Shown piece by piece: positions 59,947 through 60,961 of a stretch of DNA of 64,000 nt. Location of the stretch: the IMG/VR virus record IMGVR_UViG_3300022698_000267, positions 1 through 64,000 of that record. One strand, given 5' to 3'. The position numbers were made by a program, and so were the translations under genes. Each line of letters begins with the position of its first letter. Positions within the stretch are counted from its first letter, which is position 1. Under the pieces are notes generated by a model. The model was not told the DNA's origin, made no database searches, and saw only the letters and a program-made list of their open reading frames with translations.

Positions 59947-60092
59947 AATTAAAGGGCTTGAAAGGTTGTTCAGAATACCATGGGTTCGATCCCCATTTTT
60001 CCAGCCAAAAATTTGGAAAATAGCCTAATTGGTTAAGGCACTTGACTGATAATCAAGAATTTAATAATCAACCTTTTTCCCATCCTTTAATT
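59947..60092 (+). ncRNA. Array unit 1: scaffolded, circularly permuted tRNA-like RNA (break in variable loop; anticodon GAT)
   Basis: T arm atggg-ttcgatc-cccat (59980-59996); ttttcca-G-CCA; linker aaaatt; tggaaaa; D arm gcct..aggc; anticodon arm cttga-ctGATaa-tcaag. Closing stems aattaaagg/cctttaatt and aaaggttg/caaccttt. Confidence 0.85.
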
Positions 60093-60098
60093 CTAATA

Positions 60099-60229
60099 TT
60101 TTAGGAATAGAGCTTGTAAGTGATTACAGATTAGCTCAATTGGATAGAGCATCAACCTCAAAAGTTGAATGTTGTGGGTTCAATTCCCATATCTACAAAA
60201 TATTACTTTCGTCTATTCTATTCCTAAAA
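60099..60229 (+). ncRNA. Array unit 2: scaffolded tRNA-like RNA, unpermuted, joined via a truncated acceptor (anticodon CAA, no CCA)
   Basis: agat; D arm gctc..gagc; tcaac-ctCAAaa-gttga; T arm gtggg-ttcaatt-cccat; atct. Closing stems ttttaggaataga/tctattcctaaaa and aagtgat/attactt. Confidence 0.8.
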
Positions 60230-60403
60230 AATTTAAAATTTTGAGAAGCTCAATAGTTATTACAGAGTATAATACGGAACGCTTGGTTGGAGGTTCAAGT
60301 CCTCCACCCCCGACCAAATTTGACGGGGGTTAGCTCAATTGGTAGAGCAGGTGTAAAAATTACAAAGAAATGACTATTTAAAAATTTCTCAAAATTTTAA
60401 ATT
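60230..60403 (+). ncRNA. Array unit 3: permuted tRNA-like RNA opened in the anticodon loop (YrlA-type geometry)
   Basis: acgct-tggtt; T arm ggagg-ttcaagt-cctcc; acccccg-A-CCA; linker aatttga; cgggggt; D arm gctc..gagc; ggtgt (pairs with acgct). 18-bp closing stem aatttaaaattttgagaa/ttctcaaaattttaaatt. Confidence 0.85.
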
Positions 60404-60414
60404 CTAAAAGCATA

Positions 60415-60462
60415 AAAATATACTAATAATATATTGTAGTTGAAAATTTTGTTCTTTGAAAA
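60415..60462 (+). promoter_or_regulatory. Second copy of the array leader (dup of 59887-59928) with a boxA-like element
   Basis: aaaatatactaataata(c/t)attgtagtt(g)aaaattttgttcttt occurs twice; TGTTCTTTGAAAA at 60450-60462. Confidence 0.6.
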
Positions 60463-60626
60463 TAAGCTAGAAGGCTCAGAAGGTGTTACAGAAATATGGA
60501 GGTTCGAGCCCTTCCCTGGCCACCACATTTATGGCCAGGTAGCCGAATTGGTACAGGCACTTGACTATGGATCAAGCAATACATTTTACACATCTTGTAA
60601 CCTTCTTCTAGCTTATTTTGAAAGAA
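60452..60626 (+). ncRNA. Array unit 4: permuted tRNA-like RNA (break in variable loop; anticodon ATG)
   Basis: T arm ggagg-ttcgagc-ccttc; cctggcc-A-CCA; linker catttat; ggccagg; D arm gcc..ggc; cttga-ctATGga-tcaag. ~22-bp closing stem with one mismatch. Confidence 0.85.
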
Positions 60627-60653
60627 TAAATTTTGTTCTTTGAGATGTAAATA

Positions 60654-60805
60654 AAACTAGAGGGCTAAAAAGTTATTACAGAAAATTTTGCCTAGTAAGC
60701 AGAAGATGTGGGTTCGAATCCCATACCCTCCACCAAATCTTATGGGGGGTTGGCTCAATTGGTAGAGCTCAAATTATGAAATAACTTTTATCCAACCTTT
60801 GGTTT
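60654..60805 (+). ncRNA. Array unit 5: permuted tRNA-like RNA (break between D and anticodon arms; anticodon AGT; G3:U70)
   Basis: tttgc-ctAGTaa-gcaga; agat; gtggg-ttcgaat-cccat; accctcc-A-CCA; linker aatcttat; ggggggt; gctc..gagc. Stems aaactagagg/cctttggttt and aaaagttat/ataactttt. Confidence 0.85.
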
Positions 60806-60810
60806 ATAAT

Positions 60811-60961
60811 ATTTGAGAAGCTTGGCAGCTATTACAGTATTTTTCGCTGCATATGCGAGAGGTCGTAGGTTCGAATCCTGCACTCCCCGCCAATTTTATG
60901 GGGAGTTAGCTCAACTGGTAGAGCACTTATATACAACATAACTGCTAAATATTTCTCAAAT
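60811..60961 (+). ncRNA. Array unit 6: permuted tRNA-like RNA (break between D and anticodon arms; loop tgCATat)
   Basis: ttcgc-tgCATat-gcgag; aggtc; gtagg-ttcgaat-cctgc; actcccc-G-CCA; linker attttat; ggggagt; gctc..gagc. Stems atttgagaa/ttctcaaat and ggcagctat/ataactgct. Confidence 0.85.

What the first reader, a model, noticed from the sequence alone, without database searches (positions are those of the whole stretch)
59980..60924. Four different attachment points for the tRNA module, with NCCA retained: possible precursors of mature tRNAs from permuted genes
Seen: the scaffold is attached at the variable loop (units 1, 4), the D/anticodon junction (units 5, 6), the anticodon loop (unit 3) or the acceptor end (unit 2, unpermuted). 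All five permuted units have a fully paired 7-bp acceptor stem, a discriminator base and an intact CCA, followed by a 6-8 nt AU-rich linker to position 1. Units 1, 4, 5 and 6 contain all four arms. Established: classical YrlA lacks the anticodon arm; permuted tRNA genes are known from some algae and an archaeon, where they mature through circular intermediates. Inference: RNase P plus 3' processing could open the linker to give an aminoacylatable two-piece RNA still held by the scaffold (as in two-piece tmRNA), or excision and ligation could give normal tRNAs. Standard tRNA finders would probably miss these genes.
Basis: partly seen in the sequence, partly recalled or inferred. Interest (0 to 1): 0.88.

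Follow-up and report, generated by a model that had tools for sequence, protein, structure and literature searches.

The report
Phage Y-RNA array beside Ro60-like gene
Six small RNAs of a jumbo phage each join a conserved two-stem handle to a rearranged tRNA look-alike, and they lie just upstream of a previously unrecognised relative of the RNA-binding protein Ro60, so they are most likely a new class of Y RNA (tRNA mimics), not hidden tRNA genes.

Summary
Window 59949-60961 (+) holds six units: five circularly permuted tRNA-like modules, each with a 7-bp acceptor hairpin, a discriminator base, CCA and a 6-8 nt AU-rich linker, plus one unpermuted module. Each unit is clamped by a two-stem scaffold.

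The "permuted tRNA gene" reading is the weaker one. The conserved part is the scaffold. A covariance model built only from module-less mini units of other loci ranks all six window units as its top hits. In 36 homologous units the two stems show strong compensatory change.

About 1 kb downstream, on the same strand, lies a 534-aa protein (61951-63555) with no Pfam or NCBIfam match. Its AlphaFold model matches only Ro60 structures at the top. An ARPP gene follows it (63571 onwards).

The order RNA array, Ro60-like gene, ARPP gene recurred in all 7 homologous loci I opened (phage contigs, Desulfococcaceae, Planctomycetes and Pedobacter, the last with RtcB). It also recurred in most of 30 further viral loci.

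Across homologues the module topologies recur. Anticodons are not conserved, many loops lack U33, and NCCA is kept in only about half of the units (8 of 9 in close relatives).

Best reading: Y-RNA-like partners of a divergent Ro60, possibly opened by RNase P as published for M. smegmatis YrlA. This is a new variant of a known kind.

The parts
59874..59902 (+). sigma-70-type promoter-like site (TTGACA, 17-nt spacer, AATAAT) upstream of U1
   Evidence: 11 of 12 consensus matches, the best in the region. This is a consensus match only.
59949..60090 (+). U1: scaffold plus permuted tRNA-like module attached at the variable region. Order: T arm, acceptor 3' strand, G-CCA, AAAATT, acceptor 5' strand, D arm, anticodon arm with loop CTGATAA.
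   Evidence: scaffold model E 0.066
60099..60229 (+). U2: scaffold plus unpermuted tRNA-like module. The acceptor stem has 2 mismatches, there is no CCA, the loop is CTCAAAA and the variable loop is short.
   Evidence: tRNA 56.6 bits; scaffold model E 1.7e-4
60239..60394 (+). U3: scaffold plus permuted module in the classical YrlA topology. The anticodon stem continues into the scaffold and there is no anticodon loop; A-CCA then AATTTGA.
   Evidence: (YrlA 37.3 bits, gathering score 69); scaffold model E 4.8e-7
60396..60457 (+). Second copy of the leader (ATATACTAATAATAYATTGTAGTTRAAAATTTTGTTCTTT, first copy at 59890) with a weaker promoter-like site at 60396-60424
60460..60618 (+). U4: same topology as U1; A-CCA then CATTTAT; anticodon loop CTATGGA
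   Evidence: scaffold model E 5.2e-6
60653..60807 (+). U5: anticodon-type hairpin (CTAGTAA), T arm, acceptor with A-CCA then AATCTTAT, D arm. The scaffold joins between the D and anticodon arms. The acceptor has G3:U70 and A73.
   Evidence: scaffold model E 5.3e-6
60811..60961 (+). U6: same topology as U5; G-CCA then ATTTTAT; loop TGCATAT with G at position 33
   Evidence: scaffold model E 1.5e-5
60974..61020 (+). Terminator-like hairpin (CCGTGA...TCACGG) followed by nine T. In L396 and L397 the equivalent position holds a mini scaffold plus a T run.
   Evidence: Read from the sequence. The automatic scan missed it because its loop is long.
61045..61929 (+). Three small ORFs (about 61045-61227, 61229-61633, 61627-61929) between the array and the Ro60-like gene; no family match
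61951..63555 (+). 534-aa divergent Ro60-like protein: helical ring plus C-terminal vWA domain with MIDAS motif DDSHS and an SDGYEN motif
   Evidence: No Pfam or NCBIfam hit. AF2 pLDDT 88.6 and pTM 0.85. The top 11 Foldseek PDB hits are all Ro60/TROVE, E 3e-7 to 4e-4. hhalign to DUF2828/DUF7788 proteins gives E 2.5e-4.
63571..64000 (+). N-terminal 143 aa of an ARPP-1/ARPP-2 domain protein; the gene runs on to contig position 64581
   Evidence: tblastn E 4e-50 to the ARPP protein of L396. The full gene in L403 passes the Pfam cut-offs.

Best explanation
The array encodes six Y-RNA-like non-coding RNAs that partner the divergent Ro60-like protein encoded about 1 kb downstream.

Each RNA has two parts. 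The first is a handle made by pairing of its own 5' and 3' ends: stem 1, an asymmetric internal loop (5' GCUY), stem 2, then UUACAG. The second is a tRNA-shaped module inserted at the top of that handle in one of a few recurrent circular permutations.

Shown here: the handle is a homologous, covarying element. It is found upstream of, and on the same strand as, this protein family in phages and bacteria, with or without a tRNA module. The protein has the Ro60 fold and is followed by an ARPP gene, plus RtcB in Pedobacter.

Inferred by analogy with Ro60/Y RNA, including Thermus phage phiLo Ro60-Yrl1/2 and Salmonella/Deinococcus Rsr-Y RNA-PNPase:
- The handle binds the Ro60-like ring.
- The tRNA-shaped module recruits or occupies tRNA-handling proteins such as exoribonucleases, repair enzymes or host anticodon nucleases. 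In a phage this would probably serve to protect or repair the translation apparatus during infection.

Also inferred: because the acceptor/T-arm minihelix, discriminator and CCA are intact, RNase P probably cuts the linker before position 1. 3' trimming would then stop at CCA. The result would be a nicked two-piece RNA held together by the handle, as published for M. smegmatis YrlA.
For: Structure of the units:
- Each unit folds as described, with z-scores of -2.4 to -4.6.
- There are sub-threshold but full-length YrlA matches.

The scaffold is the conserved element:
- Scaffold model R1 was built from 8 mini units of other loci. RNAalifold predicts 17 pairs, 14 of them with compensatory changes.
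- With filters off over 6 kb of the window, the six best hits are exactly U1-U6, all on the + strand. Their E-values run from 4.8e-7 to 0.066, and the next hit has E 1.3.
- Over 34 loci, 48 of 50 hits lie on the strand of the Ro60-like gene, almost all upstream of it.
- In 36 aligned units, 92.4% of cells pair against 63.9% in shuffles. There are 178 double-change cells against 48.7 in shuffles, reached by 0 of 500 shuffles; slid controls score about 0.16 against 0.85.

The protein partner:
- AF2 gives pLDDT 88.6, and the top 11 PDB matches are all Ro60.
- The Ro-like plus ARPP pair, with tRNA-like units upstream, is present in all 7 homologue loci opened. In the window itself the ARPP gene starts at 63571.

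Support from outside this family:
- An independent phage RNA family (CAGCAA scaffold) sits a median 425 nt from, and on the same strand as, a DUF2828 protein that also has the Ro60 fold.
- Published precedents exist for RNase P cleavage of a YrlA and for a phage Ro60 binding upstream Y-like RNAs (PMC4201824; PMC12135203).
Against: - There is no direct evidence of transcription, processing or binding.
- The Ro60 binding motif GNCGAAN0-1G is absent, so binding would have to use a different recognition element.
- The protein is not recognised by Pfam TROVE, and TM-scores are moderate (0.36-0.51), although the alignments are full length.
- Three small ORFs and a terminator-like hairpin lie between the array and the protein gene.
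- The biological role of ARPP is unknown.
Confidence: 0.75

Rival explanations
1. Permuted tRNA genes. The units would be precursors that give working tRNAs. One route is excision of the scaffold and ligation. The other is RNase P opening, giving two-piece tRNAs with a very long split variable arm that are aminoacylated and decode.
For: - De-permuted U1, U4, U5 and U6 are called tRNA by ARAGORN at default settings.
- All five permuted units keep N-CCA, and 8 of 9 permuted units in the closest relatives do too.
- Four of five anticodon-type loops have C32-U33 and a purine at 37.
- U5 and its counterpart in L399 share a G3:U70/A73 acceptor stem.
- The anticodons would read codons common in an AT-rich genome (own knowledge).
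Against: - The scaffold is the conserved, covarying part, and it occurs without any tRNA module in 21 of 65 units.
- Anticodon triplets differ between orthologous units, and 9 of 21 homologous loops lack the near-universal U33.
- U3 has no anticodon loop. U6 has G33. U2 has a mismatched acceptor stem, no CCA, and a CAA anticodon without the long variable arm of bacterial tRNA-Leu.
- NCCA is lost in roughly half of homologous permuted units.
- There is no bulge-helix-bulge motif at the junctions, and no splicing endonuclease or ligase among the window ORFs scanned.
Confidence: 0.08
2. Free-standing tRNA decoys or sponges. The RNAs would soak up host tRNA-directed defence nucleases or tRNA-modifying enzymes on their own. 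The scaffold would serve only for stability and processing, and the neighbouring Ro60-like gene would be functionally unrelated.
For: - The anticodon-arm shape is conserved while the triplet varies widely, as expected if many tRNAs are imitated.
- The setting is a phage.
- Phage tRNA clusters often hold related units.
Against: - There is conserved same-strand linkage of this scaffold to the Ro60-like/ARPP pair in phages and in bacterial chromosomes.
- Mini units without any tRNA module are kept.
- The internal loop and UUACAG are conserved in sequence, which looks like a protein-binding site rather than a mere clamp.
Confidence: 0.1
3. Decayed remains of a tandem tRNA cluster, or a long structured 5' leader of the downstream operon, with no function as separate RNAs.
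For: - A tandem duplication of CCA-encoding tRNA genes cut at different points would produce exactly such permuted modules with an intergenic linker (inference).
- BLAST matches span tRNA-tRNA junctions in Vibrio phages.
- The array lies upstream of the operon on the same strand.
Against: - There are strong compensatory changes in the scaffold and in the acceptor and anticodon stems.
- The same topologies recur in distant loci.
- There are a separate promoter-like site and a terminator-like hairpin.
Confidence: 0.05

Closest known systems
YrlA (Rfam RF02553), the tRNA-like Y RNA of Salmonella, Mycobacterium and mycobacteriophages, bound by Rsr/Ro60
   Same: - The RNA ends pair into a stem that carries a tRNA-like domain: T arm, acceptor stem closed by a loop, D arm.
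- It is encoded close to, and on the same strand as, a Ro60-type gene.
- M. smegmatis YrlA is cut by RNase P and carries CCA (PMC4201824).
- U3 has the same topology as YrlA.
   Different: - There is no GNCGAAN0-1G motif.
- The units score 37 bits against a gathering score of 69.
- The handle is different: two stems, GCUY and UUACAG.
- CCA is encoded rather than added.
- Full anticodon arms are present, several permutation topologies occur, and six copies are arrayed.
- The partner protein is not recognised by the TROVE profile.
Thermus phage phiLo Ro60 with Yrl1 and Yrl2
   Same: A phage-encoded Ro60 with Y-like RNAs encoded just upstream. It binds them and forms complexes with host PNPase (PMC12135203). 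Its structure (9l5y/9kop) is among the top matches of the window protein.
   Different: Those RNAs carry the CGAA motif and are not described as permuted tRNAs. No ARPP partner is reported.
Deinococcus radiodurans Yrn1
   Same: A Y RNA whose tRNA-like part has the opposite orientation to YrlA. This is comparable to the unpermuted U2 type.
   Different: It has the classical Ro-binding helix and occurs as a single gene.
Two-piece (circularly permuted) tmRNA
   Same: A permuted gene in which the T arm, acceptor 3' strand and CCA precede the acceptor 5' strand. It is processed into two paired pieces. G3:U70 alanine identity is seen in U5.
   Different: ARAGORN finds no tmRNA and there is no tag reading frame. 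The tmRNA_permuted model scores only 20 bits against 47.
Permuted tRNA genes of Cyanidioschyzon merolae and some archaea
   Same: The 3' half lies upstream of the 5' half with an intervening linker, and the joining points vary.
   Different: Those genes depend on a bulge-helix-bulge motif and the splicing endonuclease and ligase. Their flanking stems are not conserved protein-linked elements. None of this is seen here.
DUF2828/DUF7788-linked CAGCAA RNAs in phage tRNA clusters
   Same: A handle plus a permuted tRNA-like module next to a protein with the Ro60 fold.
   Different: The handle has a single stem with ACAGCAA and CCUGUU. Acceptor loops are mostly closed and 3-7 nt long, and NCCA occurs in only 6 of 69 units.

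Membership tests
YrlA / bacterial Y RNA | tRNA-like domain with a T arm, an acceptor stem closed by a loop, and a D arm, carried on a stem formed by the RNA ends | tested here: met
YrlA / bacterial Y RNA | GNCGAAN0-1G motif near the 5' end (proposed Rsr contact; PMC4201824) | tested here: not met
   There is no match in 59930-60965. CGAA occurs only in two T loops and one D arm.
YrlA / bacterial Y RNA | Encoded within 4 kb of a Ro60 orthologue on the same strand | tested here: met
   The array ends at 60961. The gene for the protein with the Ro60 fold starts at 61951 on the same strand. The protein is a structural homologue only.
YrlA / bacterial Y RNA | Reaches the Rfam RF02553 gathering score (69 bits) | tested here: not met
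   The best scores are 37.3 and 34.3 bits.
YrlA / bacterial Y RNA | Physically bound by the Ro60 protein | not testable with these tools
   Needs pull-down or gel-shift experiments.
Ro60 / TROVE proteins (window 61951-63555) | Match to the TROVE sequence profile | tested here: not met
   No Pfam or NCBIfam hit. A PDB sequence-profile search found no Ro60.
Ro60 / TROVE proteins (window 61951-63555) | Ring of helical repeats plus a C-terminal vWA domain with a MIDAS motif | tested here: met
   AF2 pLDDT 88.6. The top 11 Foldseek hits are all Ro60, with about 550 aligned columns. D357, S359 and S361 are invariant in alignment A2, and the motif reads DDSHS.
Permuted tRNA genes (algal/archaeal type) | 3' half upstream of the 5' half; a canonical cloverleaf after de-permutation | tested here: met
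   ARAGORN calls U1, U4, U5 and U6 after de-permutation.
Permuted tRNA genes (algal/archaeal type) | Bulge-helix-bulge motif at the junction, and a splicing endonuclease and ligase | tested here: not met
   The junctions are large asymmetric loops next to 7-10 bp stems. No such enzyme was found among the window ORFs scanned. The rest of the 273-kb contig was not examined.
Permuted tRNA genes (algal/archaeal type) | Decoding features conserved among orthologues (anticodon, U33) | tested here: not met
   Triplets differ between orthologous units, and 9 of 21 loops lack U33.
tmRNA (two-piece) | tRNA-like domain plus a tag-encoding reading frame | tested here: not met
   ARAGORN finds no tmRNA. 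The Rfam permuted tmRNA model scores 20 bits against 47.

The most novel reading that the evidence does not exclude
After RNase P opens the linker, at least some units become aminoacylated two-piece RNAs while still tethered to the Ro60-like ring. Candidates are U5, through its G3:U70/A73 alanine identity set (shared with its counterpart in L399), and U1 and U4, which would be complete tRNAs with a long split variable arm. Such a charged, protein-bound tRNA mimic could act on ribosomes in a tmRNA-like or decoding role. Alternatively it could act as a sensor or decoy for charged-tRNA-specific host defences.
Probability: 0.1. Interest if true: 0.9.

Novelty: new variant of a known kind. Interest (0 to 1): 0.68.

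Why it matters
Ro60 and Y RNAs are known from animals, about 5% of bacteria and a few phages. Their RNA partners have been hard to find by homology.

- This locus links a structurally Ro60-like protein family that current sequence profiles miss to its own RNA class. That class has a distinct handle and is absent from Rfam. Both occur in many jumbo phages and in several bacterial phyla, next to ARPP and sometimes RtcB.
- A tRNA-shaped module can be plugged into one conserved handle in at least three recurrent circular permutations, or left out. This supports a modular view of Y RNAs as a binding handle plus an exchangeable effector part.
- A second Ro60-like family (DUF2828), with its own handle, is abundant in phage tRNA clusters. 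Ro60-type ribonucleoproteins may therefore be a common phage tool for handling tRNA damage or defence.
- Retained NCCA offers a direct, testable route to the question of whether Y RNAs are ever charged.

Tried and rejected
- BLAST of the array against 50,697 phage records found only tRNA-level matches across tRNA-tRNA junctions. BLAST of related units found nothing useful.
- A CCA-requiring pattern scan of viral contigs returned mostly ordinary tandem tRNA genes. It was useful only because a few true permuted units led to the CAGCAA family.
- The genome scan with the CAGCAA pattern gave almost only chance hits.
- A scan for the window-type handle (AGCT..TTACAG..T arm) found only the window's own contig.
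- Synteny through the upstream MreB-like gene failed. Its closest homologues have no array nearby.
- T4 rnaC and rnaD were checked as possible relatives. They are not permuted and lack the handle.
- Sequence-only tests of the 534-aa protein were uninformative: a weak LeoA hit, and no PDB hit even with a profile. The fold comparison was needed.
- My simple two-stem finder was noisy, with many chance hits, so I replaced it with the covariance model.
- Pedo-repair RNA (recalled from memory as RtcB-linked) did not match the Pedobacter locus.
- Burroughs and Aravind 2016 and the Sim et al. 2020 review were not held in the library. I therefore cannot exclude that this protein family was already called ROT/TROVE there.
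- The metagenome scan was not used.
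Full report
**Setting.** The window is the first 64 kb of IMG/VR contig IMGVR_UViG_3300022698_000267, which is 273,563 bp long. It is an AT-rich jumbo phage. It has a T4-type major capsid protein, a portal protein, ClpP and two ORFs of about 2,500 aa. 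The finding lies between a DnaJ-like ORF (59483-59842) and a run of small ORFs.

- ARAGORN sees one tRNA in the whole window, which is U2. At its gathering scores Rfam sees U2 and two chimeric tRNA alignments.
- Folding each unit on its own gives two outer stems, a T arm, a 7-bp acceptor hairpin, a D arm and usually a 5-bp/7-nt hairpin. The z-scores are -2.4 to -4.6 against dinucleotide shuffles.
- The five permuted units have 7 of 7 acceptor pairs, all with different sequences. Each is followed by one base, then CCA, then 6-8 AU-rich bases before position 1.
- After in-silico de-permutation, U1, U4, U5 and U6 are called tRNA by ARAGORN at default settings. In native order they are not.

**The conserved element is the handle.**
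- All units share the same 5' layout: stem 1, GCUY, stem 2, UUACAG.
- Homologues of the downstream 534-aa protein were looked up on their contigs. Each of the seven loci opened carries tRNA-like units with the same handle, upstream of the gene and on the same strand. These are four phage-like contigs, a Desulfococcaceae genome, a Planctomycetes chromosome and a Pedobacter contig.
- Some of these units are mini versions with no tRNA module. Eight such mini units aligned with 17 predicted pairs, 14 of them with compensatory changes.
- A covariance model built from those eight alone found 50 places in 34 loci. Of these, 48 are on the strand of the protein gene.
- In a filter-free search of window 58000-64000, the six best hits were exactly U1-U6. 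Their E-values run from 4.8e-7 to 0.066, and the next hit has E 1.3.
- On 36 aligned units, 92.4% of cells pair against 63.9% in shuffles. There are 178 double-change cells against 49 in shuffles, reached by 0 of 500 shuffles. Slid controls score about 0.16 against 0.85.

**The partner protein.**
- Window 61951-63555 (+) has no Pfam or NCBIfam family.
- It belongs to a large family of about 530-aa proteins that some sources call "VWA domain-containing".
- An AlphaFold model built from 30 homologues has pLDDT 88.6 and pTM 0.85.
- Its top 11 PDB matches are all Ro60: human, Xenopus, Thermus phage phiLo and Deinococcus Rsr. The alignments are full length, with probability 1.0 and E from 3e-7 to 4e-4. 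TM-scores are 0.36-0.51.
- The vWA MIDAS motif is intact.
- Directly downstream, 63571-64000 encodes the start of an ARPP-1/ARPP-2 protein.
- The same Ro-like and ARPP pair occurs in every homologous locus opened. In Pedobacter, RtcB follows the pair and a WYL regulator lies upstream.

**What varies and what does not.** Among 65 units of this family, 23 are permuted, 21 unpermuted and 21 mini.
- The permuted units fall into two recurrent layouts. In one, about 30 nt precede the T arm and about 70 nt follow the acceptor stem. In the other, the figures are about 50 and 52. These correspond to the U1/U4 and U5/U6 types.
- The anticodon-type hairpin is structurally conserved. In 21 of 21 unpermuted units it lies 4-5 nt before the T stem, and its stems covary. 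However, the triplets all differ, and 9 of 21 loops lack U33.
- NCCA at the exact position occurs in 8 of 9 permuted units of the closest relatives (L396-L399). Overall outside the window it occurs in about 12 of 25, with forms such as ACTTAT, TCAAAA and GCAA elsewhere.
- One Desulfococcaceae unit keeps G-CCA but has about 125 nt inserted before position 1.
- NCCA is therefore far more frequent than the chance rate of 1 in 64, but it is dispensable for the family.

**A second family.** Early pattern scans uncovered a much more abundant phage RNA family with the layout UUUU-AGGNNNN-NNN-CAGCAA ... module ... NNNN-CCU-GUU. It lies inside phage tRNA clusters.
- It is almost absent from cellular genomes.
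- Of 69 units with a T arm, acceptor hairpin and D arm, only 6 begin the acceptor loop with NCCA.
- In 25 of 80 loci a protein of about 475 aa with DUF2828 and DUF7788 domains lies a median 425 nt away, always on the same strand. Phosphoesterase, phosphatase and kinase genes are nearby.
- Its AlphaFold model also matches Ro60 first.
- This independent case supports the general rule that a handle plus a tRNA mimic pairs with a Ro60-fold protein.

**Comparison with what is known.**
- Chen et al. 2014 define YrlA by three features: the GNCGAAN0-1G motif, the tRNA-like domain, and location within 4 kb of Ro60 on the same strand.
- They also show that M. smegmatis YrlA, the one with a 7-bp acceptor stem, is cut by RNase P and gains CCA in vivo. 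Both halves stay on Rsr.
- Thermus phage phiLo Ro60 binds two upstream Y-like RNAs and host PNPase.
- The window units fail the motif test and the Rfam threshold. The protein fails the TROVE profile.
- This is therefore not a member of YrlA as currently defined. It has the same architecture and genomic logic, so I call it a new variant of a known kind.

**Mechanism and confidence.**
- I put about 0.75 on the reading that these are Y-RNA-like partners of the Ro60-like protein.
- RNase P opening of the NCCA-linker loop is plausible, at about 0.4-0.5. The basis is that an acceptor/T-arm minihelix with CCA is a known minimal RNase P substrate (established knowledge), together with the M. smegmatis case. 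It is untested here.
- Production of ordinary or decoding tRNAs is unlikely, at about 0.08.
- No expression or binding data exist. The rest of the contig was not read.

Noticed in passing
L009, L045, L071, L133, L147 and about 110 other viral loci (e.g. L009:1126-1243): An abundant phage RNA family with the handle UUUU-AGGNNNN-NNN-CAGCAA ... CCUGUU around a mostly closed-acceptor permuted tRNA-like module. It lies inside tRNA gene clusters and next to a DUF2828/DUF7788 protein that has the Ro60 fold. It is not in Rfam and is nearly absent from cellular genomes.
   Followed up: partly
window 58010-59032 (+): A phage-encoded MreB-like actin, about 60% identical to MreB of Desulfonema, Desulfococcaceae and Beggiatoa-type bacteria. 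A homologue of the Ro60-like protein is also found in Desulfococcaceae bacterium HSG7. Together these give a possible host clue.
   Followed up: partly
window 59890-59928, 60418-60457, 60630-60641: A repeated leader, ATATACTAATAATAYATTGTAGTTRAAAATTTTGTTCTTT (core ATTTTGTTCTTT), lies before U1, U4 and U5. The copies could be internal promoters or scars of segmental duplication of the array.
   Followed up: no
L400:3540-3790: A U6-type unit in a Desulfococcaceae genome keeps G-CCA after the acceptor 3' strand but has about 125 nt inserted before position 1. The loop can therefore tolerate a large insertion.
   Followed up: no
L399:1563-1703 and window 60653-60807: The same acceptor stem (GGGGGGU/ACCCUCC, with G3:U70 and discriminator A73, the alanine identity set) occurs in two units whose T stems differ. 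The adjacent Ro60-like proteins are only about 45% identical.
   Followed up: no
L402:6587-8005 and L402:1608-3353: In Pedobacter the Ro60-like/ARPP pair is followed by RtcB and preceded by a divergently oriented WYL-domain protein. This resembles the rsr-yrlBA-rtcBA logic of Salmonella.
   Followed up: no
window 61045-61929 (+): Three small ORFs without family matches lie between the array and the Ro60-like gene. The middle one has a CxxC...CxxC pattern. L396 and L397 have a different small ORF (about 125 aa) between the Ro-like and ARPP genes.
   Followed up: no
window 12234-19934 (-) and 30826-38154 (-): Two very large ORFs (2,566 and 2,442 aa) lie in the structural region and were not examined. 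Laminin_G_3 lectin-like domains occur in neighbouring large proteins (839-4111, 29252-30808).
   Followed up: no
L120:2909-3172 (phage T4 rnaC, rnaD): The T4 stable RNA rnaC carries a T arm and an acceptor-like 3' end next to the tRNA cluster. It is not permuted and lacks either handle. rnaD contains ACAGCAG near its 3' end, which is probably coincidental.
   Followed up: partly
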